Origin: Auanema rhodensis
Taxonomy: Eukaryota > Animalia > Nematoda
Length of the DNA: 64,000 bases
NCBI GenBank assembly: GCA_964057225.1
Contig: OZ059895.1
Coordinates: 12,772,001-12,836,000 of the forward strand
Direction: 5' to 3'
Part shown: piece after piece, positions 5,684 to 50,700 of the stretch
Position numbering within the stretch: position 1 is the first letter of the stretch
Layout: each line of letters opens with the position of its first letter
Notes under the pieces: model-generated
Databases searched by the model: none
Told to the model about the DNA's origin: nothing
The model's input: only the letters and a program-made list of their open reading frames with translations
Made by a program: the position numbers and the translations under genes

Positions 5684-5901
5684 TTAACTTTACTGTTTCT
5701 ATCTATTTCCTATTGAAACAAACATTGTTTTAACACTATACAACTGTGAAACCTTTTTTAATTTATTGTATTTGGAGCTCATAAGATTTGATATCATCGA
5801 GGAATTTAGATGTAACGTAGAAAATTACATAACTAACATGAAATTGGAAAAAAAACAATAACGAGGATAAGTATGTAAATCATTGAATATCAGATTTTTT
5901 C

Positions 5902-6020
5902 GCTTACGACCATACCACGTTGAAAGTACGCCATCCCGTCCGATCTGGCAAGTCAAGCAACGTTGGGCCCGGTTAGTACTTGGATCGGAGACGGCTTGGG
6001 AATCCCGGGTGCCGTAAGCT
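5902..6020 (+). rRNA. 5S ribosomal RNA gene (representative copy)
   Basis: GCTTACGACCATACC…GCCGTAAGCT, 119 nt; ends pair as helix I; internal control region with AGTACTTGGATCGGAG; followed by T-runs; nematode-like sequence. Confidence 0.98.
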
Positions 6021-6034
6021 TTTCAAATTTTTTT
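6020..6034 (+). terminator. Pol III oligo-T terminators (T4 then T7), present in every full unit
   Basis: TTTTcaaaTTTTTTT directly at the 5S 3' end. Confidence 0.85.
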
Positions 6035-6035
6035 A

Positions 6036-6064
6036 ACGATCATACCACGTTGAAAGTACGCCAT
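6036..6064 (+). pseudogene. 29-nt duplicate of 5S nt 5-33, downstream of each full gene (representative)
   Basis: acgatcataccacgttgaaagtacgccat versus gene acgaccataccacgttgaaagtacgccat (1 mismatch), offset exactly 130 bp. Confidence 0.93.
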
Positions 6065-9000
6065 GCAGCTGATTTTCAATTTTATCTCTTCAGTAACAAA
6101 TGTTTTTAATTTTCCAGCAGTTTTACTTAGATAGCTCAACCCAAGGCATCAAAATATCTTCAATCTTATTTCTATATTACAGTTATAAACCAGTAGTTTA
6201 TGAACCTTCATCTTAACTTTACTGTTTCTATCTATTTCCTATTGAAACAAACATTGTTTTAACACTATACAACTGTGAAACCTTTTTTAATTTATTGTAT
6301 TTGGAGCTCATAAGATTTGATATCATCGAGGAATTTAGATGTAACGTAGAAAATTACATAACTAACATGAAATTGGAAAAAAAACAATAACGAGGATAAG
6401 TATGTAAATCATTGAATATCAGGTATTTTCGCTTACGACCATACCACGTTGAAAGTACGCCATCCCGTCCGATCTGGCAAGTCAAGCAACGTTGGGCCCG
6501 GTTAGTACTTGGATCGGAGACGGCTTGGGAATCCCGGGTGCCGTAAGCTTTTCAAATTTTTTTAACGATCATACCACGTTGAAAGTACGCCATGCAGCTG
6601 ATTTTCAATTTTATCTCTTCAGTAACAAATGTTTTTAATTTTCCAGCAGTTTTACTTAGATAGCTCAACCCAAGGCATCAAAATATCTTCAATCTTATTT
6701 CTATGTTACAGTTATAAACCAGTAGTTTATGAACCTTCATCTTAACTTTACTGTTTCTATCTATTTCCTATTGAAACAAACATTGTTTTAACACTATACA
6801 ACTGTGAAACCTTTTTTAATTTATTGTATTTGGAGCTCATAAGATTTGATATCATCGAGGAATTTAGATGTAACGTAGAAAATTACATAACTAACATGAA
6901 ATTGGAAAAAAAACAATAACGAGGATAAGTATGTAAATCATTGAATATCAGGTATTTTCGCTTACGACCATACCACGTTGAAAGTACGCCATCCCGTCCG
7001 ATCTGGCAAGTCAAGCAACGTTGGCCCCGGTTAGTACTTGGATCGGAGACGGCTTGGGAATCCCGGGTGCCGTAAGCTTTTCAAATTTTTTTAACGATCA
7101 TACCACGTTGAAAGTACGCCATGCAGCTGATTTTCAATTTTATCTCTTCAGTAACAAATGTTTTTAATTTTCCAGCAGTTTTACTTAGATAGCTCAACCC
7201 AAGGCATCAAAATATCTTCAATCTTATTTCTATATTACAGTTATAAACCAGTAGTTTATGAACCTTCATCTTAACTTTACTGTTTCTATCTATTTCCTAT
7301 TGAAACAAACATTGTTTTAACACTATACAACTGTGAAACCTTTTTTAATTTATTGTATTTGGAGCTCATAAGATTTGATATCATCGAGGAATTTAGATGT
7401 AACGTAGAAAATTACATAACTAACATGAAATTGGAAAAAAAACAATAACGAGGATAAGTATGTAAATCATTGAATATCAGGTATTTTCGCTTACGACCAT
7501 ACCACGTTGAAAGTACGCCATCCCGTCCGATCTGGCAAGTCAAGCAACGTTGGGCCCGGTTAGTACTTGGATCGGAGACGGCTTGGGAATCCCGGGTGCC
7601 GTAAGCTTTTCAAATTTTTTTAACGATCATACCACGTTGAAAGTACGCCATGCAGCTGATTTTCAATTTTATCTCTTCAGTAACAAATGTTTTTAATTTT
7701 CCAGCAATTTTACTTAGATAGCTCAACCCAAGGCATCAAAATATCTTCAATCTTATTTCTATATTACAGTTATAAACCAGTAGTTTATGAACCTTCATCT
7801 TAACTTTACTGTTTCTATCTATTTCCTATTGAAACAAACATTGTTTTAACACTATACAACTGTGAAACCTTTTTTAATTTATTGTATTTGGAGCTCATAA
7901 GATTTGATATCATCGAGGAATTTAGATGTAACGTAGAAAATTACATAACTAACATGAAATTGGAAAAAAAACAATAACGAGGATAAGTATGTAAATCATT
8001 GAATATCAGGTATTTTCGCTTACGACCATACCACGTTGAAAGTACGCCATCCCGTCCGATCTGGCAAGTCAAGCAACGTTGGGCCCGGTTAGTACTTGGA
8101 TCGGAGACGGCTTGGGAATCCCGGGTGCCGTAAGCTTTTCAAATTTTTTTAACGATCATACCACGTTGAAAGTACGCCATGCAGCTGATTTTCAATTTTA
8201 TCTCTTCAGTAACAAATGTTTTTAATTTTCCAGCAGTTTTACTTAGATAGCTCAACCCAAGGCATCAAAATATCTTCAATCTTATTTCTATATTACAGTT
8301 ATAAACCAGTAGTTTATGAACCTTCATCTTAACTTTACTGTTTCTATCTATTTCCTATTGAAACAAACATTGTTTTAACACTATACAACTGTGAAACCTT
8401 TTTTAATTTATTGTATTTGGAGCTCATAAGATTTGATATCATCGAGGAATTTAGATGTAACGTAGAAAATTACATAACTAACATGAAATTGGAAAAAAAA
8501 CAATAACGAGGATAAGTATGTAAATCATTGAATATCAGATTTTTTCGCTTACGACCATACCACGTTGAAAGTACGCCATCCCGTCCGATCTGGCAAGTCA
8601 AGCAACGTTGGGCCCGGTTAGTACTTGGATCGGAGACGGCTTGGGAATCCCGGGTGCCGTAAGCTTTTCAAATTTTTTTAACGATCATACCACGTTGAAA
8701 GTACGCCATGCAGCTGATTTTCAATTTTATCTCTTCAGTAACAAATGTTTTTAATTTTCCAGCAGTTTTACTTAGATAGCTCAACCCAAGGCATCAAAAT
8801 ATCTTCAATCTTATTTCTATATTACAGTTATAAACCAGTAGTTTATGAACCTTCATCTTAACTTTACTGTTTCTATCTATTTCCTATTGAAACAAACAAT
8901 GTTTTAACACTATACAACTGTGAAACCTTTTTTAATTTATTGTATTTGGATCTCCTAAGATTTGATATCATCGAGGGATTTAGATGTAACGTAGAAAATT

Positions 9001-9075
9001 ACATAACTAACATGAAATTGAAAAAAAAACAATAACGAGGATAAGTATGTAAATCATTGAATATCAGATTTTTTC

Positions 9076-9108
9076 GCTTACGACCATACCACGTTGAAAG
9101 TACGCCAT
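9076..9108 (+). pseudogene. Truncated 5S (nt 1-33 only) of a 399-bp deletion unit (representative of ~19)
   Basis: The 5S start runs directly into spacer gcagctg; 130-bp deletion between the direct repeats removes the internal promoter. Confidence 0.93.
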
Positions 9109-12100
9109 GCAGCTGATTTTCAATTTTATCTCTTCCGTAACAAATGTTTTTAATTTTCCAGCAGTTTTACTTAGATAGCTCAACCCAAGGCATCAAAATA
9201 TCTTCAATCTTATTTCTATATTACAGTTATAAACCAGTAGTTTATGAACCTTCATCTTAACTTTACTGTTTCTATCTATTTCCTATTGAAACAAACATTG
9301 TTTTAACACTATACAACTGTGAAACCTTTTTTAATTTATTGTATTTGGAGCTCATAAGATTTGATATCATCGAGGAATTTAGATGTAACGTAGAAAATTA
9401 CATAACTAACATGAAATTGGAAAAAAAACAATAACGAGGATAAGTATGTAAATCATTGAATATCAGGTATTTTCGCTTACGACCATACCACGTTGAAAGT
9501 ACGCCATCCCGTCCGATCTGGCAAGTCAAGCAACGTTGGGCCCGGTTAGTACTTGGATCGGAGACGGCTTGGGAATCCCGGGTGCCGTAAGCTTTTCAAA
9601 TTTTTTTAACGATCATACCACGTTGAAAGTACGCCATGCAGCTGATTTTCAATTTTATCTCTTCAGTAACAAATGTTTTTAATTTTCCAGCAGTTTTACT
9701 TAGATAGCTCAACCCAAGGCATCAAAATATCTTCAATCTTATTTCTATATTACAGTTATAAACCAGTAGTTTATGAACCTTCATCTTAACTTTACTGTTT
9801 CTATCTATTTCCTATTGAAACAAACATTGTTTTAACACTATACAACTGTGAAACCTTTTTTAATTTATTGTATTTGGAGCTCATAAGATTTGATATCATC
9901 GAGGAATTTAGATGTAACGTAGAAAATTACATAACTAACATGAAATTGGAAAAAAAACAATAACGAGGATAAGTATGTAAATCATTGAATATCAGGTATT
10001 TTCGCTTACGACCATACCACGTTGAAAGTACGCCATCCCGTCCGATCTGGCAAGTCAAGCAACGTTGGGCCCGGTTAGTACTTGGATCGGAGACGGCTTG
10101 GGAATCCCGGGTGCCGTAAGCTTTTCAAATTTTTTTAACGATCATACCACGTTGAAAGTACGCCATGCAGCTGATTTTCAATTTTATCTCTTCAGTAACA
10201 AATGTTTTTAATTTTCCAGCAGTTTTACTTAGATAGCTCAACCCAAGGCATCAAAATATTTTCAATCTTATTTCTATATTACAGTTATAAACCAGTAGTT
10301 TATGAACCTTCATCTTAACTTTACTGTTTCTATCTATTTCCTATTGAAACAAACATTGTTTTAACACTATACAACTGTGAAACCTTTTTTAATTTATTGT
10401 ATTTGGAGCTCATAAGATTTGATATCATCGAGGAATTTAGATGTAACGTAGAAAATTACATAACTAACATGAAATTGGAAAAAAAACAATAACGAGGATA
10501 AGTATGTAAATCATTGAATATCAGGTATTTTCGCTTACGACCATACCACGTTGAAAGTACGCCATCCCGTCCGATCTGGCAAGTCAAGCAACGTTGGGCC
10601 CGGTTAGTACTTGGATCGGAGACGGCTTGGGAATCCCGGGTGCCGTAAGCTTTTCAAATTTTTTTAACGATCATACCACGTTGAAAGTACGCCATGCAGC
10701 TGATTTTCAATTTTATCTCTTCAGTAACAAATGTTTTTAATTTTCCAGCAGTTTTACTTAGATAGCTCAACCCAAGGCATCAAAATATCTTCAATCTTAT
10801 TTCTATATTACAGTTATAAACCAGTAGTTTATGAACCTTCATCTTAACTTTACTGTTTCTATCTATTTCCTATTGAAACAAACATTGTTTTAACACTATA
10901 CAACTGTGAAACCTTTTTTAATTTATTGTATTTGGAGCTCATAAGATTTGATATCATCGAGGAATTTAGATGTAACGTAGAAAATTACATAACTAACATG
11001 AAATTGGAAAAAAAACAATAACGAGGATAAGTATGTAAATCATTGAATATCAGGTATTTTCGCTTACGACCATACCACGTTGAAAGTACGCCATCCCGTC
11101 CGATCTGGCAAGTCAAGCAACGTTGGGCCCGGTTAGTACTTGGATCGGAGACGGCTTGGGAATCCCGGGTGCCGTAAGCTTTTCAAATTTTTTTAACGAT
11201 CATACCACGTTGAAAGTACGCCATGCAGCTGATTTTCAATTTTATCTCTTCAGTAACAAATGTTTTTAATTTTCCAGCAGTTTTACTTAGATAGCTCAAC
11301 CCAAGGCATCAAAATATCTTCAATCTTATTTCTATATTACAGTTATAAACCAGTAGTTTATGAACCTTCATCTTAACTTTACTGTTTCTATCTATTTCCT
11401 ATTGAAACAAACATTGTTTTAACACTATACAACTGTGAAACCTTTTTTAATTTATTGTATTTGGAGCTCATAAGATTTGATATCATCGAGGAATTTAGAT
11501 GTAACGTAGAAAATTACATAACTAACATGAAATTGGAAAAAAAACAATAACGAGGATAAGTATGTAAATCATTGAATATCAGGTATTTTCGCTTACGACC
11601 ATACCACGTTGAAAGTACGCCATCCCGTCCGATCTGGCAAGTCAAGCAACGTTGGGCCCGGTTAGTACTTGGATCGGAGACGGCTTGGGAATCCCGGGTG
11701 CCGTAAGCTTTTCAAATTTTTTTAACGATCATACCACGTTGAAAGTACGCCATGCAGCTGATTTTCAATTTTATCTCTTCAGTAACAAATGTTTTTAATT
11801 TTCCAGCAGTTTTACTTAGATAGCTCAACCCAAGGCATCAAAATATCTTCAATCTTATTTCTATATTACAGTTATAAACCAGTAGTTTATGAACCTTCAT
11901 CTTAACTTTACTGTTTCTATCTATTTCCTATTGAAACAAACATTGTTTTAACACTATACAACTGTGAAACCTTTTTTAATTTATTGTATTTGGAGCTCAT
12001 AAGATTTGATATCATCGAGGAATTTAGATGTAACGTAGAAAATTACATAACTAACATGAAATTGGAAAAAAAACAATAACGAGGATAAGTATGTAAATCA

Positions 12101-12595
12101 TTGAATATCAGGTATTTTCGCTTACGACCATACCACGTTGAAAGTACGCCATCCCGTCCGATCTGGCAAGTCAAGCAACGTTGGGCCCGGTTAGTACTTG
12201 GATCGGAGACGGCTTGGGAATCCCGGGTGCCGTAAGCTTTTCAAATTTTTTTAACGATCATACCACGTTGAAAGTACGCCATGCAGCTGATTTTCAATTT
12301 TATCTCTTCAGTAACAAATGTTTTTAATTTTCCAGCAGTTTTACTTAGATAGCTCAACCCAAGGCATCAAAATATCTTCAATCTTATTTCTATATTACAG
12401 TTATAAACCAGTAGTTTATGAACCTTCATCTTAACTTTACTGTTTCTATCTATTTCCTATTGAAACAAACATTGTTTTAACACTATACAACTGTGAAACC
12501 TTTTTTAATTTATTGTATTTGGAGCTCATAAGATTTGATATCATCGAGGAATTTAGATGTAACGTAGAAAATTACATAACTAACATGAAATTGGA

Positions 12596-13012
12596 TGTTA
12601 CATACATATCTCAAAGGAAAGCAGCTGACCATGGCAGCTGCTATTATTAAACTAATGCAGATAGTTTTTAAGCAATTCTGAGAATATTCTAGATGCACTT
12701 TTTATAAGCTTTGTAACAATTTGTGTAAACTGAGTAGGAGTTGTATGGATATATAAACCTGAGTCCTCAAGACTCAGGCATCTCATTATCTTATTATCTT
12801 ACTTTCTCTTTATCTTCTTTATATTCTCTTTCTTAACTCTAGCTTAAATCTTTGTATAATTATATTATAATGCGAACAATAAACCTTTATATATTTGATT
12901 TCTTGTTTCTTATTTCACCTTACATTACACACTTATATTTAAAATCATACTCATCTTCTCATAGTCTGTTTGGATCTCTCAACTTGGAACCATTGAGAAT
13001 CTAAATGGAACG
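12596..13012 (+). repeat. Family A 5' LTR (417 bp)
   Basis: TGTTAC…GGAACG; TATATAAA at 12750-12757; AATAAA at 12878-12883; repeated at 24511 and 33114. Confidence 0.97.
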
Positions 13013-13030
13013 TGGAGGTTCCACCGAGAT
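13013..13030 (+). promoter_or_regulatory. Primer-binding site (tRNA-Gln), family A
   Basis: TGGAGGTTCCACCGAGAT, an 18-nt complement of the tRNA-Gln 3' end as I recall it (ATCTCGGTGGAACCTCCA), immediately after the LTR. Confidence 0.9.
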
Positions 13031-14211
13031 CCTTCCTTTTGGACAGGATCTCGTAAAGGAACTCAAGCGCTACCGTCTACATCTCTTATTCAATTAAAAA
13101 TCTTATCTCTCTCTTAAAGTTAGCTTATAATATTTTCTTAAAAACTCTAAAAACTTTTCTATTAAAAATTATATCCAAAAACTCTTTACAAAAACTCAGT
13201 TTTCCATTCATTATATTCTCATAAATCATTTTCAATTATTCATAAGAGTACTTATATCATTTATCATTCTCTCTATCCAAAATCCTATATACGAAAATTA
13301 TTCAAATTCAATAATTAACTTTTCTAAGAATTATAAGTTTATTTTCACATTTTTTGAACAAAAATAGTTAAGTTCTTTATAAAATTAATTTAGAATTAAG
13401 AAATAAAAAAGAATATTACCTCTCAATCTTAATCATCTTATCATATTATCTGAATCTTCATCTTATCATACTATCTTAATCATCCTATCATACCATATTT
13501 TCATTATTTTCTTTATGTTCGTTTATAAAACTATTATTCTTATGCTACTACACTGTATTCTCATAAACCCACCCCTTCCCCCCCCCCGTAATTTCATAAA
13601 CAAGAAATCCCGTGTTAAACACGACAGTAAAAATATTTATTAGGCGCAGCGTATCCAAATTCCGATTACCTTAGCACCTGAAAATACGAAAAATAATTAA
13701 ATTAATCAATCAGTTTTAACTCATACGCAAAAACCATCCCCCCTCGTTAAGAATAATGCCAGACACTCAAGAGACTCGAGCGGAGGCCGACACTCAGGAT
13801 AAGACGTACGCCCCATGAAATAATTAGAGAATTTTTGAATTGAAATCTGCCCCACATTGATATAAATAATAAGAGTGGTCTCGCCATCATAGAGTCAGGG
13901 AGCAGGATGCAGAAGGCAGCTGACATACCTGTGACTCAGATAGGTTAATGAGGTCTGGGAAAATGAAATGATTGCGAAAATTCTATTTTGTATCCTTGTC
14001 CCAAAAGACTGGCGAACTATTAACTTTCATTTCATGCCTTTTTCACAATATAGAACTTGTCCCTTCGAAAAGGCACACTAGTTTCAAACCTGTGTTAGAC
14101 CCGGACGAGCTATATTGGTAAAGAGATTACTTGCAAGACTAGCTACCTTCATAAGAATCGCGCACACAAACCCAACATTATTCTTTACGTTTTTCAATAT
14201 ATAAAATTATT

Positions 14212-17200
14212 TTGGCACACGTTGGATATAACAAATTTCCTTACAGGATACCAACGATGCTGCCCAATACTGGTCCAAAACCTCCGCTGGACCCTGCTGC
14301 CACTTCAAATATTATAAGAAGAAAAAGACAACCGCCCGCAACATATTCTCCCCCCTCTGCAAAACAAGCGAAGTTAAGCATTAAAACAAAGTCAATGGTA
14401 ATACATACCCCAAGACATCGCGGCATTCAAAAACAATTCACCAATCCCAAATCACATGAAAAAACGAAGAAACAAAAAACAGACATAGTCGAAAGAAACA
14501 CCTTAGAAAAGAAAATTATCCCAAACATTAAACCTATTCCTAAAAACATAGCAAGCAAAGGGAACCCTCAAAACCCCCCAACCAACACCATACCAAATAC
14601 AATCAACCCAATCAATCCTTTAATAGCCACCCCTAGAAGAAGCAATACACCAACCACACAAAAATCACCTACGCCCGCACTTTCTTCAACCACACCCGCA
14701 GTAAGCTCATCCCCACCTCTACGAAACTCACCTTCATCCATTGATCATTCTACATCCGGGCATTCTCTATCTCCGTCTCTTCCATCGCAAACTAATCAAG
14801 CAAATACTTTTGTTGCAGAAAACAAGAGAATTAACCCAAGAATGGACCCAATGGACGAAGGCGCACCACTTACGCACACCTCGGGAAGGGCACCTGTTCC
14901 AACACCTACAATCATCCCTCAACCAGCAGCGATTCCGTCCGCCATACGCGATATAAAAGCTCCACGCTACGATGGAAAAACACCATTCAACCGCTATCTA
15001 CTATACCTAGATGAACACTTCAACGCTACAAGAACAACTATGCCCGAACGTCTTCAAAGCATACAATTATTGCTAGAAGATGATCGAGCAAGAGAAGCGT
15101 ACAGAAAACTCACAACCGAAGATAAGCGACTTGGATGGGACCATGTCAAGAAGCGACTCTCAGAAATGATCACACCGAAAAAACAGAGAGAACGAGCAAT
15201 GCACCGCCTACATGGCTTGAAACAGTTACCAACGGAATCGGTACAAAGCTTTGCAACAAGATGTTCTAACGAAGCCTACTCAGCTATGGACATGAACAAC
15301 GAAAGTGAGCTTAACATGCTCCGATCCACCTTCACCTGGGGACTAAGACCCGAAATAAGCGAACATGTTAGCCGTCTAGACCCACCAAACTTTGAGGAAG
15401 CTTACGAAATGGCCTTACGAGAAGAACTCTTTATACAAAATAGACCACCATCGTTCGTCAACAATATGGAGAAGTCGTTCAACAACCTCAACATTCGAGA
15501 CTCAAAGGACAACAATCAATACCAGAGAAACGAATCTAAGGAGTTCAAAGGAACCAAACCGATGTATAATGGCAATGGCAAACCACACAACCGATATCCG
15601 GACAGATACAACAACCAATATCGGCCTCATCAACACCAATACAGGAACCATAACTCACGATTCTCTCAAAATAAGGGATCAAGACAAAACTACTTCGACA
15701 GATCACGGAACAGAAGCCAGGAAAGACCATACTATCGAAACCGCGACCAAAACTATAGCGGACACAACAACCGGCGACAATCAAACAATCACGAACAATA
15801 CCCCTCTCAATACAATCGAAGCCAATACAACAATTATAGAAGTCGCCCGCGCAGCACCTCCAATGGACCGGAACGGTACAGAGAACGCACACAGAGCCCA
15901 GGAGTACGTTTTCAAGTCAACAACGTCACGGAAAACGAAGTACCGAACAACAAAAGAAAATCAACACCATTCCTACCCCTCTTTATCACAATTATCGCAC
16001 TCATTATAAATACATGCAGTGCAGAAACAACGTACCAGTTATGCACAGGAAACAGAGGAGGAATATATGTTGAGCCGCCATCGCCAACAGCTTGCCGATC
16101 CATCGCACCAACTAATAACCATATCCAGAAGACTACAGCAGAATTGTTCATCCAAAACCTACAACCAAAAGAATGGGAAGCATGGAAATGTGCAATTGAA
16201 ACTTACCAACTCTGCATTCACGACGTTTTCTTCATCAGAGAAACTAATGTCTCACTAGCAAAAGTTTCACCAACAACACTGCAAGAATGTTCGTCAGCTA
16301 TTAAAGAAAGAATATTCAACGGTACCAACCTTCAAAGAGAAGCACCAGGACTCTATGGAACTCCATTCCCACATACAACTATTACTAATGGTATATGGAA
16401 ACAGGAATGCGAACAACGTACCAGATTCATAGCTGAACGAGGACACATGACCAGCCTACAAGACAATACAGTACTCTCAGATATATTCATAAACGACAAC
16501 GGATGCACCAGTGACAAAGGACAATGCCTAACCAACAACGCTCTCATCATATGGACCCCACCATCAGAAAAACATAGTTGCTCGTACACTTCATTAGGCT
16601 CTCACGAAGTTTTTATATCAGAAGACACCATATTGATTCCCGGAATTCAAAGTGCTTTTATTCTAAACAATAAAACACCGGAAAAAGAAGCCTCCTCATG
16701 CTTACAAAAAGATATATTTACTACAAATAGTGGAACTCTAATCTCCTTCAACTCAACCTCAAGCTTAGGACGATCAAGAAGACACGCAATCACGGAATAC
16801 CCTAAAGGATTCTTGACAGTTCATCAATACCCCTCGCTAAGATATTCAGCCAGCAAAACCGGAACTATTCTACTATATACAACCTATATTCAACGGAAAA
16901 GACTTGACATCCATTACAATCTCAATAACATAACAAATATGTTACCTAAGTATATCGCAATCTTCAAATACCTAGGTATAAATTTTGATGTTATCAAAAA
17001 TCGTCTTATATGGCACAAATATGAAGACGTCAACATAGCCATTCTACACGCCCTAGGAGAAGCAGAAATAAGAGAAGCAACAAAAATCGCGATCGATAAT
17101 CTATCGTATAAGGAACTTACGCATAAACTTAGCAAACGGATCACAATTAAGGATTTTAAGAAGATACTACCAACCAAAACAGGAGACTACTATGAAATCG

Positions 17201-35669: not shown

Positions 35670-36013
35670 CGTTCCGTTATGCTCCTGCGTCGATAATATA
35701 AACCATTGTAGTTTATACCATGACGCGAATAGTATTCCTTGGTGTAGCGGTAGGAATACAGAGCATAAGGTCAATCATAAGATAAAAGAGAGAAAGATTT
35801 ATTGGCATGAAACTACAACAATAATATACAAAGATAAAGATACAATACAATAAGATAAATATGAGTATAAAGACTAAACTACAAGCCGTCCATCAGCTTG
35901 CTAAGAGGCGAACTCCCGACCAAGGGAACGAGGGAAGGCGGAGCCATTCCTCGGTCCTCTGGTCGTCTGGCTCTAACCCTTCAGCTACATATATGGGGAG
36001 TCCGAATGGAACG
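35670..36013 (-). repeat. Family B 3' LTR (344 bp)
   Basis: Direct repeat of 47412-47755; CGTTCC…GGAACG termini. Confidence 0.96.
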
Positions 36014-36024
36014 TGCCCTTTTTC
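36014..36024 (-). promoter_or_regulatory. Polypurine tract of family B
   Basis: Minus strand GAAAAAGGGCA immediately before the 3' LTR. Confidence 0.75.
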
Positions 36025-42594: not shown

Positions 42595-42597
42595 TGT

Positions 42598-43950
42598 TTA
42601 AGTTTCGTAGTCTTCTTGTTCTTTTATCCAGCTTTCGTCCAATTGCAGTGCGCATTGCGCTTTAGCCCTTTTTTGACGCTTAGCTGGCAACTTTTTATAT
42701 TCTCTTTCAATTAAGTTGTGTATATTACTGTCATTTGGATATTTGGGAAAGAGTATATAATTGCCCGTGGTTGATTGAAATATAGGTTGCGAAAAACATG
42801 ATGTAATCTGTTTTGGAATTTGTTTATTGTCGATAACAAGGGCTGACTGCGTATTGGGAATCAGTATTATGCTGTCTCCAATGATGGCATCATATTCGCT
42901 CATGTCTATATAGTTGCATCTCTGTTCGTATGATTGGATTTCCCAGATGATCATTGAAGTATTGGATGCGCATTGGCCATGATGTGCAAGACAGCCTTCC
43001 GTATTGAGTAATAGATTTGTCAATATGGTGTCGTCTGGCATCCTGGTCATAACGCCTCTTTCCAAAACCAGTCGTTCTTTTTCTTCGAATTGTTCGTAAT
43101 TGAATGAGCGCGCTGGAGAGAATGTAGGTTCGGTTGTCGCGTATGTCAAGCTATCCAATTTAATCAGGTCTTCTGATTTCCATTTACGGTCGCGGACAGC
43201 CAGTCTACATTCGTTTTCTGTTGTTGGCTCAATTCGAACAATGGAGGAGTTATGATCTCTTAAAAATAGCAAATCCCTGATGCATATTTTATGTATTCCT
43301 TTTGAACATCGCCATGAATCCCATTTGTGAGCCGTCTGGTTTCTGGTATACAGGTGTATGTTTGTGCGGAGGACATGTTTGGTAGGTGGTATTGTGCATT
43401 TCCTCAGGGGTGGGGGTATAAGGAGGGCTCCACCTGTAGCTTTAGTGCACATCTGATAAGCATCAGTTATGGTGATTAGTGATAAGATCACTGATAAAGC
43501 TACTGCTAGTGTTAAGGGGGATATCAAGGTCAAATTATTGACTCTTGAGCCTCTTCCTCTACCTCTATTATTGTTGTTTCCCTTGAAGGGATTATTGCCG
43601 CGTTGACGGTTATCACTCTCCTGATTACGTGATAAGTTGTTATTTCTTTGATACCAATTTGGATTTGAGAAATTTCTACCGCGATTACCAAGATTGCGGT
43701 TTCTTACGAAAGAATTTTGCAAATTTTGTGGTTTCTGATTATTTGATGAATTTTGATAACTTTGATAATTTTGATAATTTTGGTAGTTTCTATTGTTAAA
43801 TGATTGATAGCCTCTGCCGATTCCTCGCCTTCCGGTGTCGCGCCTGGGAGGGAATGTTCTATCGATTGCGTTAACCAGTAGCGCCTGAGGGTCGGCTACT
43901 TGGTTAGCAATTGATTCCTCCCATCTGGCATTTATCAATTGCCTCGGCAA
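42598..43950 (-). CDS. Family B polyprotein, middle part (RG/N-rich nucleocapsid-like region, signal peptide, Env N-terminal half)
   Basis: LISPLTLAVALSVILSLITITDA signal peptide ~43527-43459; YQMCT..GG…PP…C matches family A YQLCT..GG…PP…C; furin RQKR 42678-42667. Confidence 0.88.
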   Translation of the reverse strand: MPRQLINARWEESIANQVADPQALLVNAIDRTFPPRRDTGRRGIGRGYQSFNNRNYQNYQNYQSYQNSSNNQKPQNLQNSFVRNRNLGNRGRNFSNPNWYQRNNNLSRNQESDNRQRGNNPFKGNNNNRGRGRGSRVNNLTLISPLTLAVALSVILSLITITDAYQMCTKATGGALLIPPPLRKCTIPPTKHVLRTNIHLYTRNQTAHKWDSWRCSKGIHKICIRDLLFLRDHNSSIVRIEPTTENECRLAVRDRKWKSEDLIKLDSLTYATTEPTFSPARSFNYEQFEEKERLVLERGVMTRMPDDTILTNLLLNTEGCLAHHGQCASNTSMIIWEIQSYEQRCNYIDMSEYDAIIGDSIILIPNTQSALVIDNKQIPKQITSCFSQPIFQSTTGNYILFPKYPNDSNIHNLIEREYKKLPAKRQKRAKAQCALQLDESWIKEQEDYET

Positions 43951-45643
43951 ACGTTTTTGGTTTAGCTCTGATTACCCCCGGGCGTATTGTGTTTTTGAGA
44001 CCGCGTAGAAAGGTGGATCTAAGGATATGGTCCTTGTGTGGGTCTGTATGGGAGAAAGCGTTTAAGCTTAGGCTTCGTAAAGTTTGTGCAAATCCATCTA
44101 CTGATAGCTCGCCTTGGGTGGAATTCTGTAGCGTTATCAGCGCCGGATCTTGATTATACTCTGGGCATAGCCTAGAGGTAAGTTCTTCGATGAGAGTATT
44201 CCACGAGCCAGATGTCTTGATAGTATCGCTAAGCTGTGTATAAGCTTCTTCAGCTCGTTCGTTTTTGAGAAGTAATGGTAAGATTGTTAATCTTTCGGGC
44301 ATAACTAAGCCTAAGGCGTTTGCAAAGGTGTTAAACTTGGCCACGAAGTCTCTAAAGTTGCGACTTCCGTCGTATATAGGGCAATATGGGGAGCTTAATG
44401 CCTGAGCAATGGTAGATTTACCCGCTCCTGGAAGCCGTGATGTTTCGGTCATTTCGGATGAGATGCCCTCAGGGTATGTGATAGGTGATATTATCACTTC
44501 GCTCCCTGTTGGATCTTGATGAGTGTTTTCTATTGCCTTAGGGTTTCTGCTAGAGGAGCCTATTATAGGTGTAGTTGTTGCGAAACGGGCTCTTGGAACC
44601 TGGATGACTTTACCAGATGCCTGAGGCGATGTTCTATCAGTTGATCGTGAGCTAGGGATCGCACTATCTGATCTGTTAAGATTAGGATTATGTGAAGAAA
44701 ACCGGGGTTTTGCTGTTCCGCCGGGTGTTGTTTTATCGCCTGGGGATAAGTTTAAAATCTTTATCAGTCGATTTGTTAAAGATCTTTTGTTTTTAAACTT
44801 ATCAGTTGTTAATGATAAGGGTGAAGCTTCTTGTATGCCTTCGAGGCTGGCTTCTACTGACAAAGTTTCTGTTGCGCGCTTACTGGGTGTTTTTGTCTTC
44901 CGCTTATTAGGGATATTCTTTTTGATCTTATCAGTGATTTTTGATAAGGTTGAAGGGTTGTCACTAAGTTGGGTGGGTTCTAAAGTTAGCGAATGTGGTT
45001 GATTAATAGGCGTGGAAGACGCTTGCGGGCTTTGTGTTAACCCGAGGGATGGGGAAGGTGCGTTATCAGTGATAACTGATAAGTTCGACGCGTTTGGGTC
45101 TGAGGTTACCGGTGAGGCAGATGCGGTTGTCGGCTTTTTTTTTTGAATTTTTCGCAAATTTTTATTAGTATCAACTGAGCGTACCTTGGGATTTGTAGTT
45201 GGAGTTTGAGTGCTGTCGTCGGCTATGATGAAGTCCGGGTCTTCGTCAGTGTCGTCAGAAGGTGAATATGTACCTTCTCGGGGAGTATAGAACTTGTCGA
45301 CTTGCGGCTTCGGCTTCTCGTCTGGTTGGTGCGGTTCTTCTATTTGAACACTGAGAAGTCGGGTGCGGCTTCGGGTACGACTTGCGACAGTAGCGTCACT
45401 GTTGATATCGGACGGGTAAAGGGCTGGGAAAGCCGATGAGAATCTTTTGGCCACCTTTGTAGGACTTTTGGTTTGGAAAAACCGAGAATGGTGAGCTACG
45501 TGTGGGATGTTGATGTAAGGTGCGTAAGATTCTTTTAGATGTGTGTTGGGAGAGAGAGAGATTCGGGAGCAATAGGATAGTCGTGCTTCGCTGGGCGATG
45601 CGGAGGGTAGATGAGAGGGAGTTTTCCAAATCGTGGCCACCAA
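43904..45643 (-). CDS. Family B polyprotein, N-terminal part (Gag)
   Basis: PIYDGS…MPERL…LLL…RA.EAY…LRSTF..GL matches the family A capsid region; frameshifted by a 1-bp insertion near 43931 relative to copy 1. Confidence 0.88.
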   Translation of the reverse strand: MVATIWKTPSHLPSASPSEARLSYCSRISLSPNTHLKESYAPYINIPHVAHHSRFFQTKSPTKVAKRFSSAFPALYPSDINSDATVASRTRSRTRLLSVQIEEPHQPDEKPKPQVDKFYTPREGTYSPSDDTDEDPDFIIADDSTQTPTTNPKVRSVDTNKNLRKIQKKKPTTASASPVTSDPNASNLSVITDNAPSPSLGLTQSPQASSTPINQPHSLTLEPTQLSDNPSTLSKITDKIKKNIPNKRKTKTPSKRATETLSVEASLEGIQEASPLSLTTDKFKNKRSLTNRLIKILNLSPGDKTTPGGTAKPRFSSHNPNLNRSDSAIPSSRSTDRTSPQASGKVIQVPRARFATTTPIIGSSSRNPKAIENTHQDPTGSEVIISPITYPEGISSEMTETSRLPGAGKSTIAQALSSPYCPIYDGSRNFRDFVAKFNTFANALGLVMPERLTILPLLLKNERAEEAYTQLSDTIKTSGSWNTLIEELTSRLCPEYNQDPALITLQNSTQGELSVDGFAQTLRSLSLNAFSHTDPHKDHILRSTFLRGLKNTIRPGVIRAKPKTFAEAIDKCQMGGINC

Positions 45644-45867
45644 TCTGACTCCGCCTATCTACCGTAAGCTTATTATAGTTAATGATGTTTATCTCTTCTC
45701 AAAAACTATTTTTATCCGATCTTGCACTTTCCTCTAATTTTGTTTTCTTACTGCTCTAGAATCTTCAAAAAAACTTTATTCATGTCGTCCCCTTTGTACT
45801 TTTGCGGCCTTTGGACATTTATTTTAAGGTTAGAAACAAAAGAAAAGAAAAGAAAGAAAGAAAAAAA

Positions 45868-46412
45868 ATGGATTTCCAACGTTATAATCCCACTGGCATG
45901 ACTTATGTCCTGTGGAAATTATACGAATCCATCGTTGAATACGATGGAGAAGGAGTTTTGGCTTATAGGCCAAATCCTGATATAATTTTGATGGTTTGTG
46001 TATCTCCATTTTATGTTTGATTATTTGATTACTTTAGTTTATCGAAGATCTCCAAATGTATTATTTGGGGCAGGGCCATATAAACTTTGCCACCTTCGTA
46101 GATGTAGCTCCCGAAGTGGAGCTTGTTGGTCGAAGGTGCTTAGTTGATCTATGCGCTCATGTATATAATGGTAGGGCCGGTTTATTAACCGCACGTCCTT
46201 GGGCCTGGTACCAGGAAAAGAGTCATTTTTATTATTATTTATTATATAGATTATTGTTTAAAATCTATATTGTTTATGATGACTCATTATTTGGTTTGGA
46301 ACTTAGGGTTTTGCGAGGTTTAGAATATAGTGAAGATTTAATTGCGAGCGAAACTCCTATGTTTCTTGCCTCTGAGTTTCGAACTCGGTTGCAAATCAAA
46401 TATGGGTATTGA
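45868..46412 (+). CDS. Putative spliced antisense accessory gene, family B copy 2 (exons 45868-45993 and 46038-46412)
   Basis: Same structure as 3801-4345: 44-nt GT-AG intron 45994-46037; AATAAA 46416-46421. Confidence 0.55.
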
Positions 46413-47398
46413 CTGAATAAATTTTGTACTCTGTGTTTTTATTTTTATGCGCTTTGCTCTGTTTTCGTCAAGAAAATGGACTTATGTTTTCAATCTTTTT
46501 TTCATTCTTTTTCCCTTAAATAGCATGTTTTGCTCAAAATGTTTTCGACATTGTGCATGCTAATGAGGTTTGAGGAGAGTTATTGAAAAGGCTGTCCTTT
46601 TTCTTGATCAAAATAAGCAAAAGTGCGTTTTCCTAAGCGAATTTCTTTTTGAAAATGAGAAAAATACGTCTATTTTTAAACATTTCCCATTTACTTAGGA
46701 TTACTGTAGGAGATAAGGGGTATCTTATGAGTTGAAACAACGAAATGATTTGAGGAAGGTGACATAATCTACGGGGATAAAATCCGTAGCAGTTATGCTT
46801 CCGCCAACTTGACCTGACTGTCAAATAAGAGCTGAGAAGTCTTATTGCAGATTTACCAGGCTTTTTCGGACTAGTGTGGTCTCTTTTTTTTTTTTTTTTT
46901 CAATTTATGTAACCGTTTTTGGTTTCCCGCAAAATAATATGTAAAATGATCTTTTACGTCTGAATATAATAATTTTTCAAAATTCTAGTCCTGACCACAA
47001 AATATACAAACTATAATCGTTTGCGCGCGTCTTATAAATTTTTGTTCCAATAATCAAACTTCTCTATGCCCAAAAAAAATGTGAACAATTATAATTTCTC
47101 GTTTGGCGAAATTGTCCTCTATTTCAATCCAAACGTCCTCAAAATGGCATGAGAAGCGGTACAAGATACGATAAAGAAAAGGGTGGACATTCAGACGGTT
47201 TTAAATTGAGGACGGCGGGCAAAAATTTTATTGGTCCTATCTCGCATTTAAGCGAGATCCCTTGTATCTGTACCTTAAACAAATTGGCGCCTTCATTTTG
47301 TTGTTTCAAGTGGAGGAATTTATAATTTAGAATGCAAAAATGGACTTTTACAATAAAAAGAAAATTTTTTTTTTTTTTTTTTCAAAAGATGAGTTCGA

Positions 47399-47411
47399 GG
47401 TGGAACCTCCA
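47399..47411 (-). promoter_or_regulatory. Primer-binding site (tRNA-Gln), family B copy 2
   Basis: Minus strand TGGAGGTTCCACC abutting the 5' LTR. Confidence 0.85.
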
Positions 47412-47755
47412 CGTTCCGTTATGCTCCTGCGTCGATAATATAAACCATTGTAGTTTATACCATGACGCGAATAGTATTCCTTGGTGTAGCGGTAGGAATA
47501 CAGAGCATAAGGTCAATCATAAGATGAAAGAGAGAAAGATTTATTGGCATGAAACTACAACAATAATATACAAAGATAAAGATACAATACAATAAGATAA
47601 ATATGAGTATAAAGACTAAACTACAAGCCGTCCATCAGCTTGCTAAGAGGCGAACTCCCGACCAAGGGAACGAGGGAAGGCGGAGCCATTCCTCGGTCCT
47701 CTGGTCGTCTGGCTCTAACCCTTCAGCTACATATATGGGGAGTCCGAATGGAACG
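47412..47755 (-). repeat. Family B 5' LTR (344 bp)
   Basis: Direct repeat of 35670-36013. Confidence 0.96.
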
Positions 47756-50700
47756 TTGGAAAAAAAACAATAACGAGGATAAGTATGTAAATCATTGAAT
47801 ATCAGGTATTTTCGCTTACGACCATACCACGTTGAAAGTACGCCATCCCGTCCGATCTGGCAAGTCAAGCAACGTTGGGCCCGGTTAGTACTTGGATCGG
47901 AGACGGCTTGGGAATCCCGGGTGCCGTAAGCTTTTCAAATTTTTTTAACGATCATACCACGTTGAAAGTACGCCATGCAGCTGATTTTCAATTTTATCTC
48001 TTCAGTAACAAATGTTTTTAATTTTCCAGCAGTTTTACTTAGATAGCTCAACCCAAGGCATCAAAATATCTTCCATCTTATTTCTATATTACAGTTATAA
48101 ACCAGTAGTTTATGAACCTTCATCTTAACTTTACTGTTTCTATCTATTTCCTATTGAAACAAACATTGTTTAAACACTATACAACTGTGAAACCTTTTTT
48201 AATTTATTGTATTTGGATCTCATAAGATTTGATATCATCGAGGGATTTAGAAGTAACGTAGAAAATTACATAACTAACATGAAATTGGAAAAAAAACAAT
48301 AACGAGGATAAGTATGTAAATCATTGAATATCAGGTATTTTCGCTTACGACCATACCACGTTGAAAGTACGCCATCCCGTCCGATCTGGCAAGTCAAGCA
48401 ACGTTGGGCCCGGTTATTACTTGGATCGGAGACGGCTTGGGAATCCCGGGTGCCGTAAGCTTTTCAAATTTTTTTAACGATCATACCACGTTGAAAGTAC
48501 GCCATGCAGCTGATTTTCAATTTTATCTCTTCAGTAACAAATGTTTTTAATTTTCCAGCAGTTTTACTTAGATAGCTCAACCCAAGGCATCAAAATATCT
48601 TCAATCTTATTTCTATATTACAGTTATAAACCGGTAGTTTATGAACCTTCATCTTAACTTTACTGTTTCTATCTATTTCCTATTGAAACAAACATTGTTT
48701 TAACACTATACAACTGTGAAACCTTTTTTAATTTATTGTATTTGGAGCTCATAAGATTTGATATCATCGAGGAATTCAGATGTAACGTAGAAAATTACAT
48801 AACTAACATGAAATTGGAAAAAAAACAATAACGAGGATAAGTATGTAAATCATTGAATATCAGGTATTTTCGCTTACGACCATACCACGTTGAAAGTACG
48901 CCATCCCGTCCGATCTGGCAAGTCAAGCAACGTTGGGCCCGGTTAGTACTTGGATCGGAGACGGCTTGGGAATCCCGGGTGCCGTAAGCTTTTCAAATTT
49001 TTTTAACGATCATACCACGTTGAAAGTACGCCATGCAGCTGATTTTCAATTTTATCTCTTCAGTGACAAATGTTTTTAATTTTCCAGCAGTTTTACTTAG
49101 ATAGCTCAACCCAAGGCATCAAAATATCTTCAATCTTATTTCTATATTACAGTTATAAACCAGTAGTTTATGAACCTTCATCTTAACTTTACTGTTTCTA
49201 TCTATTTCCTATTGAAACAAACATTGTTTTAACACTATACAACTGTGAAACCTTTTTTAATTTATTGTATTTGGAGCTCATAAGATTTGATATCATCGAG
49301 GAATTTAGATGTAACGTAGAAAATTACATAACTAACATGAAATTGGAAAAAAAACAATAACGAGGATAAGTATGTAAATCATTGAATATCAGATTTTTTC
49401 GCTTACGACCATACCACGTTGAAAGTACGCCATGCAGCTGATTTTCAATTTTATCTCTTCCGTAACAAATGTTTTTAATTTTCCAGCAGTTTTACTTAGA
49501 TAGCTCAACCCAAGACATCAAAATATCTTCAATCTTATTTCTATATTACAGTTATAAACCAGTAGTTTATGAACCTTCATCTTAACTTTACTGTTTCTAT
49601 CTATTTCCTATTGAAACAAACATTGTTTAAACACTATACAACTGTGAAACCTTTTTTAATTTATTGTATTTGGATCTCATAAGATTTGATATCATCGAGG
49701 GATTTAGATGTAACGTAGAAAATTACATAACTAACATGAAATTGGAAAAAAAAACAATAACGAGGATAAGTATGTAAATCATTGAATATCAGGTATTTTC
49801 GCTTACGACCATACCACGTTGAAAGTACGCCATCCCGTCCGATCTGGCAAGTCAAGCAACGTTGGGCCCGGTTAGTACTTGGATCGGAGACGGCTTGGGA
49901 AACCCGGGTGCCGTAAGCTTTTCAAATTTTTTTAACGATCATACCACGTTGAAAGTACGCAATGCAGCTGATTTTTAATTTTATCTCTTCAGTAACAAAT
50001 GTTTTTAATTTTCCAGCAGTTTTACTTAGATAGCTCAACCCAAGGCATCAAAATATCTTCAATCTTATTTCTATATTACAGTTATAAACCAGTAGTTTAT
50101 GAACCTTCATCTTAACTTTACTGTTTCTATCTATTTCCTATTGAAACAAACATTGTTTTAACACTATACAACTGTGAAACCTTTTTTAATTTATTGTATT
50201 TGGAGCTCATAAGATTTGATATCATCGAGGAATTTAGATGTAACGTAGAAAATTACATAACTAACATGAAATTGGAAAAAAAACAATAACGAGGATAAGT
50301 ATGTAAATCATTGAATATCAGATTTTTTCGCTTACGACCATACCACGTTGAAAGTACGCCATGCAGCAGATTTTCAATTTTATCTCTTCCGTAACAAATG
50401 TTTTTAATTTTCCAGCAGTTTTACTTAGATAGCTCAACCCAAGGCATCAAAATATCTTCAATCTTATTTTTATATTACAGTTATAAACCAGTAGTTTATG
50501 AACCTTCATCTTAACTTTACTGTTTCTATCTATTTCCTATTGAACCAAACATTGTTTAAACACTATACAACTGTGAAACCTTTTTAATTTATTGTATTTG
50601 GATCTCATAAGATTTGATGTCATCGAGGGATTTAGATGTAACGTAGAAAATTACATAACTAACATGAAATTGGAAAAAAACAATAACGAGGATAAGTATG

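What the first reader, a model, noticed from the sequence alone, without database searches (positions are those of the whole stretch)
5684..47813. Two retroelement families repeatedly target the spacer upstream of intact 5S genes
Seen: four independent insertions with different target sites, none within a 5S coding sequence. Positions relative to the next 5S start are -57 (A, TSD TGGA), -58 (B, TSD TTGG, opposite orientation), -77 (A solo LTR, TSD TTAC) and -218 (B copy 1, one flank only). Two different families landed 1 bp apart in different units, and all four precede full-length genes. Known: yeast Ty3 and Ty1 and Dictyostelium elements target Pol III genes through TFIIIB/TFIIIC or Pol III contacts. 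Inference: this looks like Pol III-complex-guided LTR integration in an animal, just upstream of the expected TFIIIB footprint. The sample is only four sites.
Basis: partly seen in the sequence, partly recalled or inferred. Interest (0 to 1): 0.85.

Follow-up and report, generated by a model that had tools for sequence, protein, structure and literature searches.

The report
Retrovirus-like insertions upstream of 5S genes
Four separate insertions of two sister retrovirus-like elements sit in the spacers of a nematode-type 5S rRNA gene array, three of them within 21 bp of each other about 57-77 bp upstream of a gene; this hints at, but with only four sites cannot prove, the RNA-polymerase-III-guided integration so far documented only in yeasts and slime moulds.

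Summary
The window holds only a 5S rDNA array (529-bp units, plus 399-bp truncated units) and four LTR-element insertions. Each has an unambiguous 4-bp target duplication, at -57, -58, -77 and -218 from the next full-length 5S gene.

The elements are envelope-carrying Ty3/gypsy endogenous retroviruses of the known nematode GAG-ENV(gB-type)-POL kind. A and B are sister families, so they represent one lineage and not two independent witnesses.

The position clustering is modestly significant: p about 0.01-0.02, or 0.005 if the 1-bp coincidence is included. That test was chosen after seeing the data.

Nothing tested here shows that the Pol III machinery is the guide:
- The built-in control, the same spacer upstream of truncated genes that lack the internal promoter, has no statistical power.
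- Seven related elements in other nematode genera are not next to any Pol III gene.
- The integrases carry no shared targeting module.
- The source genome could not be reached.

Verdict: real, repeated, locally focused integration into a 5S array. Pol III-complex guidance is the best single explanation (about 0.4) but is unproven. A safe-haven array with a local hot spot, and chance, remain live rivals. One genome-wide junction map would decide it.

The parts
5684..64000 (+). 5S rDNA tandem array. It has 49 full-length genes in 529-bp units and about 21 truncated 398/399-bp units. The array is interrupted only by the elements listed in the other parts.
   Evidence: Rfam RF00001, 102-108 bits; TRF; spacing table; coverage by the unit.
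1..5683 (-). Element B, copy 1: the 5' half of a provirus, cut by the window start. The 5' LTR is about 5339-5683 and the PBS-like site is about 5326-5338. A gag-env reading frame is open from 3588 to the window edge. The array resumes at -218 of the 5S gene at 5902-6020. Only one flank is visible.
   Evidence: 98.5% identical to B copy 2 over 5.7 kb; unit alignment; stop-to-stop map; LTR BLAST.
12596..24927 (+). Element A, a full-length provirus of 12,332 bp. LTRs are at 12596-13012 and 24511-24927 (417/417 identical). The TSD is TGGA, at 12592-12595 and 24928-24931. The PBS-like site starts at 13013. The 3' end lies 57 bp before the 5S gene at 24985-25103.
14212..23457 (+). Element A, a single uninterrupted gag-env-pol frame of 3081 codons. 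Features along it:
- gag 15079-15348
- signal-like stretch 15970-16023
- Thr-rich stretch 17674-17916
- gB-like match 18178-18414
- membrane anchor 18949-19035
- PR 19279-19572
- RT 20317-20796
- RNase H 20983-21375
- IN 21721-22227
- GPY/F 22636-22662
- acidic tail to the stop
   Evidence: the ORF listing; Pfam; translation; coordinates.
33114..33530 (+). Solo LTR of family A, 417 bp, 408/417 identical to the LTRs of the full copy. The TSD is TTAC, at 33110-33113 and 33531-33534. It ends 77 bp before the 5S gene at 33608-33726.
35670..47755 (-). Element B, copy 2, a full-length provirus of 12,086 bp. LTRs are at 35670-36013 and 47412-47755 (343/344 identical). The TSD is TTGG, at 35666-35669 and 47756-47759. 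The PBS-like site is next to 47411. gag is at 43904-45643, a middle ORF at 42598-43950, and env(gB/Monjiviricetes fusion)-PR-RT-RH-IN at 36769-42594. The reading frame is interrupted twice: a frame change within 43904-43950 and an in-frame stop at 42598-42600. The 5' LTR end lies 58 bp before the 5S gene at 47814-47932.
24928..24984 (+). Example of the retained upstream spacer between an insertion and its 5S gene. It is 57 bp and includes an A8 tract (-53 to -46) and a TATA-like TATGTAAAT around -30. The same sequence precedes both full and truncated genes across the array.
   Evidence: upstream 100 bp printed and occurrences counted.
8681..9474 (+). Example of a truncated 399-bp unit. It keeps the complete upstream spacer and the first 33 nt of 5S, then joins directly to the spacer. 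The internal control region is missing. These units are a natural control for promoter dependence.
   Evidence: TRF; junction sequence.

Best explanation
One lineage of nematode envelope-carrying Ty3/gypsy endogenous retroviruses, represented by sister families A and B, has integrated repeatedly, at different times, into the spacers of a 5S rRNA gene array. Integration has a hot spot 57-77 bp upstream of the transcription start.

The most likely mechanism is that the pre-integration complex is steered by what sits on an active 5S gene. That could be direct contact of integrase with TFIIIB, TFIIIC or Pol III. It could also be indirect, through the bent DNA or positioned nucleosome at the upstream edge of that complex. 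Either way the DNA is joined just outside the TFIIIB footprint, leaving the gene and its 57 bp of upstream promoter intact.

Shown: the insertions, their independence, their positions, the class of the elements and their kinship.

Inferred: that the array is a preferred target rather than merely a tolerated one, and that the Pol III complex is the guide.
For: - Exact junctions and 4-bp TSDs at four different sites.
- Different ages: A LTRs 417/417 identical, B2 LTRs 343/344, solo LTR 97.8% to A, B1 98.5% to B2. Integration into the array therefore recurred over time, although unequal crossing-over tends to purge interrupted units (general knowledge of concerted evolution).
- Clustering: 3 of 4 sites within 20 bp (p=0.017), two within 1 bp (joint p=0.005), at least 3 of 4 within 100 bp upstream of a gene (p=0.011).
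- Both element orientations occur (2 and 2). There is no homology between the elements and the unit, and LTR-end/target similarity is at background. Homologous recombination or a homing sequence is therefore not the cause.
- All well-studied strongly non-random LTR or retroviral integration works by tethering to chromatin-bound factors (established knowledge; Ty1-AC40, Ty3-TFIIIB and TRE5-TFIIIB in PMC5911963).
- The observed distances match the TRE5 and NLTR-B range given there.
- 47% of the window is provirus, whereas relatives in other nematodes are few-copy (1-10 members per cluster).
Against: - Only four sites, noticed after the fact.
- The -218 site does not fit a TFIIIB-proximal window.
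- Seven relatives with both LTRs (C. auriculariae, remanei, nigoni, brenneri, Diploscapter, Mesorhabditis, Ancylostoma) have no 5S, tRNA or other Rfam Pol III gene beside them. The nearest is a tRNA-Ile 4.2 kb away.
- No module shared by the A and B integrases and absent from relatives. The C-terminal tails are acidic low-complexity sequence, as in the relatives.
- The full-versus-truncated-gene control is uninformative here (P about 0.2-0.3).
- No data on tRNA, U6 or other Pol III genes of the host.
Confidence: 0.4

Rival explanations
1. Safe haven plus local hot spot, with no Pol III involvement. Insertions land widely in the genome, but in a compact genome they survive mainly in redundant tandem arrays. 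Within the repeated 529-bp unit, the related integrases of A and B share a weak DNA-shape or sequence preference, for example the edge of the A8 tract at -53 to -46. The locally best site is therefore hit again and again, because it is present in dozens to hundreds of copies.
For: - The identical target sequence occurs 63 times in the window, so repeated use of one preferred site needs no tether.
- A and B are sisters and could share an inherited base-level preference.
- Three of four TSDs begin with TT.
- Relatives elsewhere insert in ordinary DNA near protein-coding genes.
- No targeting module is seen.
- TE fragments in animal 5S spacers have been reported without any targeting claim (Diplodus sargus, table in PMC10946416).
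Against: - No common motif among the four sites or the relatives' TSDs (GAAC, ATAG, TATT, GCAT).
- Other A/T-tract edges in the unit are unused.
- Integrase sequence preferences are generally weak (established knowledge).
- Arrays homogenise and purge interrupted units, so passive accumulation of four insertions of one lineage, and of no other transposon, is not the obvious expectation.
Confidence: 0.3
2. Chance. Four neutral insertions in a tolerant array happen to include three that lie close together.
For: - p-values of 0.005-0.03 are not extreme for a pattern picked out by eye from a large scan.
- One of the four sites (-218) is elsewhere in the unit.
- 'All upstream of full genes' is expected 20-30% of the time.
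Against: - Two families landing 1 bp apart and a third event 20 bp away has a joint p of 0.005.
- All four insertions belong to one retroviral lineage, and no other transposon is in the 33.5 kb of array.
Confidence: 0.2
3. Sequence-specific homing into 5S rDNA, in the manner of R1/R2, Mutsu or Dada. The element would recognise one defined nucleotide sequence of the unit.
For: All four copies seen are in 5S units. Site-specific elements of multicopy RNA genes exist in animals (PMC3706591, PMC8869645; Mutsu in zebrafish 5S).
Against: - Four different target sites with four different TSDs.
- The elements are integrase-encoding LTR elements with no sequence-specific endonuclease.
- The insertions lie in the spacer, not at one fixed position in the gene.
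Confidence: 0.03

Closest known systems
Nematode GAG-ENV-POL endogenous retroviruses with herpesvirus-gB-type envelope (Sacco et al. 2022, cited in Chary & Hayashi, eLife 2026, PMC13524379)
   Same: - Ty3/gypsy pol (PR-RT-RH-IN).
- A gB / class III fusion-like env placed between gag and pol.
- LTRs.
- A and B nest inside a clade made only of nematode sequences.
- Shared clade traits seen here: 4-bp TSD, a PBS-like TGGAGGT(T/C)CCACC right after the 5' LTR, and TGT... LTR starts.
   Different: - The papers read here say nothing about integration sites (no occurrence of 'target site', 'integration site' or 'rDNA').
- A and B are long (12.1-12.3 kb).
- Their LTRs end in CG instead of CA.
- All copies seen are in a 5S array.
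Ty3 (S. cerevisiae) and Tj1 (S. japonicus), Ty3/gypsy elements that integrate at Pol III transcription starts
   Same: Same superfamily. Insertion is upstream of Pol III genes, including 5S, in either orientation, and the gene is left intact (PMC5911963; PMC4600332).
   Different: - Ty3 and Tj1 insert 1-10 bp from the start site, within the TFIIIB-bound region. Here the distances are 57-77 bp, and 218 bp for one copy.
- Hosts are fungi, not animals.
- A tRNA gene association, their hallmark, could not be tested here.
Dictyostelium DGLT-A (Ty3/gypsy), and TRE5-A and NLTR-B (non-LTR)
   Same: They show position-specific integration upstream of Pol III genes in a compact genome. TRE5 sits 40-54 bp upstream of tRNA genes and 37-41 bp upstream of 5S genes. 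NLTR-B sits 39-64 bp upstream. These are the distances closest to -57/-58/-77.
   Different: - TRE5 and NLTR-B are non-LTR elements that use ORF1-TFIIIB contact and target-primed reverse transcription.
- DGLT-A inserts closer, at 13-33 bp.
- The hosts are amoebozoans.
Ty1 (S. cerevisiae, Ty1/copia)
   Same: It integrates upstream of Pol III genes, including 5S, over a broad window with nucleosome-related periodicity (abstracts). A broad periodic pattern could accommodate both the -57/-77 and the -218 sites.
   Different: It belongs to a different superfamily. Targeting works through integrase-AC40 contact, and no comparable motif was identified here.
Site-specific elements of multicopy RNA genes in animals: R1/R2, Mutsu (5S, zebrafish), Dada DNA transposons
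   Same: They follow the same 'multicopy RNA gene as safe haven' logic, in animals.
   Different: Those elements insert at one fixed nucleotide position inside the gene and use sequence-specific nucleases or transposases. Here there are four different spacer sites and an integrase.
Troyka LTR retrotransposons (Kojima 2025, PMC12440569)
   Same: They have 5'-CG...CG-3' termini like element B.
   Different: Troyka makes 3-bp TSDs, has no env and no GPY/F motif, and was not found in nematodes. A and B make 4-bp TSDs, carry env and have GPY/F.

Membership tests
Pol III-gene-targeting retrotransposons (Ty3 / Tj1 / DGLT-A / TRE5 type behaviour) | Insertions at a narrow, reproducible distance from the Pol III transcription start | tested here: inconclusive
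   Three of four sites lie at -57, -58 and -77; one lies at -218. p is 0.011-0.017, with n=4 and a test chosen post hoc.
Pol III-gene-targeting retrotransposons (Ty3 / Tj1 / DGLT-A / TRE5 type behaviour) | Association holds for unrelated Pol III genes (tRNA, U6, 5S) whose flanks share no sequence | not testable with these tools
   The window contains only 5S units. The source genome was not found, and the closest database relatives are no more than 56% identical in protein.
Pol III-gene-targeting retrotransposons (Ty3 / Tj1 / DGLT-A / TRE5 type behaviour) | Dependence on a functional promoter / loaded TFIIIC-TFIIIB | tested here: inconclusive
   All 4 insertions precede full genes. However, only about one third of the units with the same upstream sequence are truncated (21 of 63), so the chance probability is 0.2-0.3.
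Pol III-gene-targeting retrotransposons (Ty3 / Tj1 / DGLT-A / TRE5 type behaviour) | Physical contact of integrase or Gag/ORF1 with TFIIIB, TFIIIC or Pol III subunits | not testable with these tools
   This needs protein-interaction experiments. Sequence shows no recognisable or A+B-specific module.
Pol III-gene-targeting retrotransposons (Ty3 / Tj1 / DGLT-A / TRE5 type behaviour) | Behaviour shared by close relatives of the element | tested here: not met
   Seven related proviruses from other nematode genera (L001-L004, L006-L008) have no Pol III gene next to either LTR. They are only 41-56% identical, so this does not exclude a trait gained in the A+B lineage.
Nematode GAG-ENV-POL gB-type Ty3/gypsy endogenous retroviruses | LTRs with target-site duplication; pol order PR-RT-RNaseH-IN with GPY/F integrase | tested here: met
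Nematode GAG-ENV-POL gB-type Ty3/gypsy endogenous retroviruses | gB / class III fusion-like envelope located between gag and pol | tested here: met
   B matches PF24664 at 7.8e-17, above the cut-off. A matches PF00606 at 5.5e-5, below the cut-off, but A aligns to B's env over 670 residues at 30% identity. A signal-like stretch and a membrane anchor are present in A.
Nematode GAG-ENV-POL gB-type Ty3/gypsy endogenous retroviruses | Phylogenetic placement among nematode elements | tested here: met
   In the RT-IN tree, A+B are sisters (SH-aLRT 99) inside a nematode-only clade (100). It was a quick search with 24 rows.
Troyka | 3-bp TSD, CG...CG termini, no env, no GPY/F | tested here: not met
   TSDs are 4 bp, and env and GPY/F are present. 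Only the termini of B match.
Sequence-specific rDNA elements (R1/R2/Mutsu/Dada type) | All copies at one identical nucleotide position of the target gene | tested here: not met
   Four different spacer positions and TSDs.

The most novel reading that the evidence does not exclude
A lineage of envelope-carrying endogenous retroviruses in a nematode has evolved Pol III-transcription-complex-guided integration. It inserts about 55-80 bp upstream of 5S (and perhaps tRNA) genes. This would be the first such targeting system in an animal. It would also be an independent origin of the safe-haven strategy known from budding and fission yeasts and dictyostelids.
Probability: 0.35. Interest if true: 0.8.

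Novelty: new variant of a known kind. Interest (0 to 1): 0.6.

Why it matters
Every documented case of retrotransposon integration aimed at Pol III genes is from yeasts or social amoebae. The 2018 review of the field (PMC5911963) lists no animal example.

An animal case would show that the safe-haven solution evolves repeatedly wherever genomes are compact. This one would be in a genetically tractable phylum, and in elements that carry a viral fusion protein and look recently active.

It would also give a new integrase-host factor pair for studying how retroviral integration is steered. It would matter for reading 5S array evolution too, since interrupted units, solo LTRs and truncated units sit side by side here.

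Even if Pol III is not the guide, the window documents repeated, recent provirus integration into a 5S array. It also contains a built-in natural control, truncated genes behind identical spacers, which makes the question directly testable.

Tried and rejected
1. Reaching the source genome.
- An exact look-up of A's polyprotein found nothing.
- The HMMER search of 1.84 billion representatives gave nothing above 52% identity.
- The metagenome scan gave one relative at 33%.
- The 19-mer at the LTR/PBS junction shared by A and B gave only a chance hit in an actinobacterium, and none in viral contigs.
- A genome-wide distribution could therefore not be obtained.

2. LTR ends resembling the target. 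By eye, TTACATA appears at the -77 site and TGGAA at -57. Scored against all 529 positions, the observed sites rank at 0.12-0.91, which is not significant. In that script the TSD index for B1 was offset by 4 bp. The conclusion is unaffected.

3. Homology between elements and the 5S unit, or Rfam RNA motifs inside A: none.

4. A targeting module in the integrase C-terminus: none shared by A and B.

5. Troyka membership, suggested by the CG...CG termini: rejected on TSD length, env and GPY/F.

6. My first reading that B copy 1 is degraded was wrong. The ORF listing omits ORFs that run off the window, and the frame is in fact open to the window edge.

7. The supplement of the eLife paper, which might have named the host or the PBS type, is not held. 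That the PBS matches the tRNA-Gln 3' end rests on my memory only.

8. Two protein word-index searches, structure prediction and fold search were left unused, because they would not bear on target choice.

The window is not human sequence.

Full report
**What is in the window.** Rfam finds 49 full-length 5S rRNA genes, all on the + strand. Most starts are 529 bp apart. Spacings of 926-929 and 1326-1327 bp come from one or two extra 398/399-bp units. Three spacings are anomalous: 12,865, 950 and 12,619 bp. The first 5.7 kb of the window is also not array. A BLAST of the window against the unit shows that everything outside four intervals is array: 1-5683, 12596-24927, 33114-33530 and 35670-47755. 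The array part totals 33.5 kb.

**Checking the observation.** I aligned each interrupted unit to a reference unit from both sides. In the three complete cases the matches sum to 533 = 529 + 4, so the 4-bp target duplications are exact.
- A full-length: 12596-24927, TSD TGGA, spacer resumes at -57 of the 5S gene at 24985.
- A solo LTR: 33114-33530, TSD TTAC, -77 of the gene at 33608.
- B copy 2: 35670-47755, TSD TTGG, -58 of the gene at 47814, coding on the minus strand.
- B copy 1: 1-5683, ending at -218 of the gene at 5902, with its other flank outside the window.

No insertion touches a 5S coding sequence, and the four downstream genes are full length with the majority sequence.

**What the elements are.**
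- A is 12,332 bp with 417-bp LTRs that are 417/417 identical. B2 is 12,086 bp with 344-bp LTRs, 343/344 identical.
- A carries one uninterrupted frame of 3081 codons. Pfam places on it a retrotransposon gag, a herpesvirus gB-like stretch, an aspartic protease, RT, RNase H, the integrase zinc-binding domain and the integrase core.
- The translation shows a signal-like hydrophobic stretch, a Thr-rich stretch and a membrane anchor between gag and protease, and a GPY/F motif after the integrase core.
- B2 has the same order, with a clear Monjiviricetes-fusion / gB match (7.8e-17).
- B2's frame is interrupted twice: a frame change within 43904-43950 and an in-frame stop at 42598-42600. B1 is open across the homologous stretch up to the window edge.
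- The closest database proteins are all from rhabditid nematodes: Heterorhabditis, several Caenorhabditis, Diploscapter, Mesorhabditis and hookworms. They are 41-56% identical and have the same gag-env-pol domain content.
- In an RT-IN tree, A and B are sisters (SH-aLRT 99) inside a clade made only of nematode sequences (100). They are still deeply diverged: 57% identical in PR-RT-RH and 43% in IN.
- This is the published class of nematode GAG-ENV-POL endogenous retroviruses with gB-type envelope (PMC13524379).

The host is therefore most likely a rhabditid nematode. The species was not identified, and the sequence is not human.

**Independence and timing.** The four sites and TSDs differ, so unequal crossing-over has not copied one event. 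LTR and copy divergences differ: A 0%, B2 0.3%, solo LTR versus A 2.2%, B1 versus B2 1.5%. Integration into this array therefore recurred over time. Two elements point with the 5S genes and two against them.

**Is the positioning more than chance?**
- For four uniform insertions on the unit, P(three within 20 bp) = 0.017, P(closest pair within 1 bp) = 0.033, and both together = 0.005. Restricting to the spacer gives 0.027 and 0.008.
- Taking the a priori expectation from known systems, 'within 100 bp upstream of a full gene', gives P(at least 3 of 4) = 0.011.
- The local focus is thus probably real, but it rests on four events noticed by eye.
The truncated units keep the complete upstream spacer, the start site and the first 33 nt of 5S, but lack the internal control region. 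They make up only about a third of the units carrying the target sequence (21 of 63), so 4 of 4 is expected 20-30% of the time.
- That same feature is valuable as a natural control for a larger sample.

**Tests bearing on mechanism.**
1. Relatives. For seven related proviruses with both LTRs in the fetched loci (L001-L004, L006-L008), ARAGORN and Rfam find no Pol III gene beside either LTR. The nearest is a tRNA-Ile 4.2 kb away in C. remanei. Pol III proximity is thus not a trait of the clade. If real, it arose in the A+B lineage.
2. Integrase. An alignment of A, B and seven relatives shows no insertion or motif common to A and B only. The C-terminal tails are acidic and low-complexity in many members.
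3. Homology. There is no similarity between the elements and the 5S unit, and no Rfam motif inside A.
4. Resemblance between LTR ends and the target sites, which I noticed by eye, is at background level when scored over all positions.
5. No motif is shared by the four sites or by the relatives' TSDs.
6. The source genome could not be reached. The decisive genome-wide map is therefore missing.

**Explanations.**
- I rank first (0.4) guidance by the Pol III transcription complex on active 5S genes. This could be direct tethering of the integrase, or could work through the DNA bend or positioned nucleosome at the upstream edge of TFIIIB. The reasons are that the focus is probably real, that strongly non-random LTR and retroviral integration is generally achieved by tethering to chromatin-bound factors, and that the distances (57-77 bp) fall in the range reported for TRE5 (37-54 bp, including 5S genes) and NLTR-B (39-64 bp). 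The insertion also leaves the gene with 57 bp of its own upstream sequence. The -218 site would need a broader, Ty1-like pattern.
- Second (0.3): the array is simply where insertions survive in a compact genome, and two related integrases share a weak base-level preference. That preference is exposed many times because the same spacer is present in dozens of copies.
- Third (0.2): chance.
- Sequence-specific homing of the R2, Mutsu or Dada kind is contradicted by the four different junctions.

**Comparison with the known and novelty.**
- The elements themselves are new members of a known class.
- TE fragments in animal 5S spacers, and site-specific elements inside animal 5S genes, have been reported.
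- Pol III-directed integration of an LTR element in an animal is not in the literature I could search. The field's review names only fungal and dictyostelid hosts, and the papers on these nematode retroviruses do not discuss target sites.
- I therefore rate the finding a possible new variant of a known kind. It is a well-verified observation with an attractive but unproven mechanism.

**Limits.**
- n = 4, and the pattern was selected post hoc.
- The tree is a quick search with 24 rows.
- The assignment of the PBS to tRNA-Gln and the size of the TFIIIB footprint rest on general knowledge, not on a tool result.
- Host identity is inferred from the kinship of the elements.

Breaks are described by position only.

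Noticed in passing
window 8681-9474 and about 20 further units, mostly 48000-64000: The 398/399-bp units equal the 529-bp unit minus 130 bp. The missing piece lies between two 29-nt direct repeats: 5S nt 5-33, and a near-copy 15 nt after the gene end. The units keep the upstream spacer, the start site and 33 nt of 5S, but lack the internal control region. They are probably products of unequal recombination. They are concentrated in the part of the array that has no provirus.
   Followed up: partly
window 12596-12599, 24924-24927, 33114-33530, 35670-35675, 47750-47755; L003 about 8096 and about 17658: The LTR termini are non-canonical. A has 5'-TG...CG-3' and B has 5'-CG...CG-3', with unambiguous 4-bp TSDs. 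A C. nigoni relative also ends in CG, while the other relatives end in CA. The usually invariant terminal CA is therefore replaced in part of this clade. Outside Troyka this is unusual.
   Followed up: partly
window 14212-23457: Element A encodes gag, a gB-like envelope (with a signal-like stretch, a Thr-rich mucin-like stretch at 17674-17916 and a membrane anchor at 18949-19035) and pol as one uninterrupted 3081-codon frame between identical LTRs. It looks like a very recent and possibly still active provirus. How an envelope protein embedded in a Gag-Pol polyprotein is expressed and routed is unclear.
   Followed up: partly
window 42598-42600 and 43904-43950 (B2) versus 1-3588 (B1): B2, despite near-identical LTRs, has a frame change and an in-frame stop in the gag-env region. 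The older-looking B1 is open over the same stretch up to the window edge.
   Followed up: partly
window 13013-13030, 47394-47411 (minus), 5326-5338 (minus); L001, L003, L007, L008 just after the 5' LTR: A conserved primer-binding-like sequence, TGGAGGT(T/C)CCACC, lies directly after the 5' LTR in A, B and the relatives. From memory it matches the 3' end of tRNA-Gln. This was not verified with a tool.
   Followed up: no
window 23622-24305: A 227-codon ORF sits between the end of pol and the 3' LTR of A. It has no Pfam match, and no ORF of 120 aa or more lies at the corresponding place in B2.
   Followed up: no
window 13013-14211 and 45644-47411: The leaders between the 5' LTR and the start of gag are very long: about 1.2 kb in A and about 1.8 kb in B2. 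B2's leader contains an A-run of about 18 near 47365-47385.
   Followed up: no
window 48343, 54969-56145, 57484, 58811, 61066, 62393, 62922: 5S gene variants with slightly lower Rfam scores (102-104 bits against 107.5) occur only in the right-hand part of the array. That is the part that is rich in truncated units and free of proviruses.
   Followed up: no
L002 14296-18011: Three tRNA-Ile(AAU) genes lie 4-8 kb downstream of the C. remanei relative. They are not adjacent to its LTR, so they were not counted as an association.
   Followed up: yes
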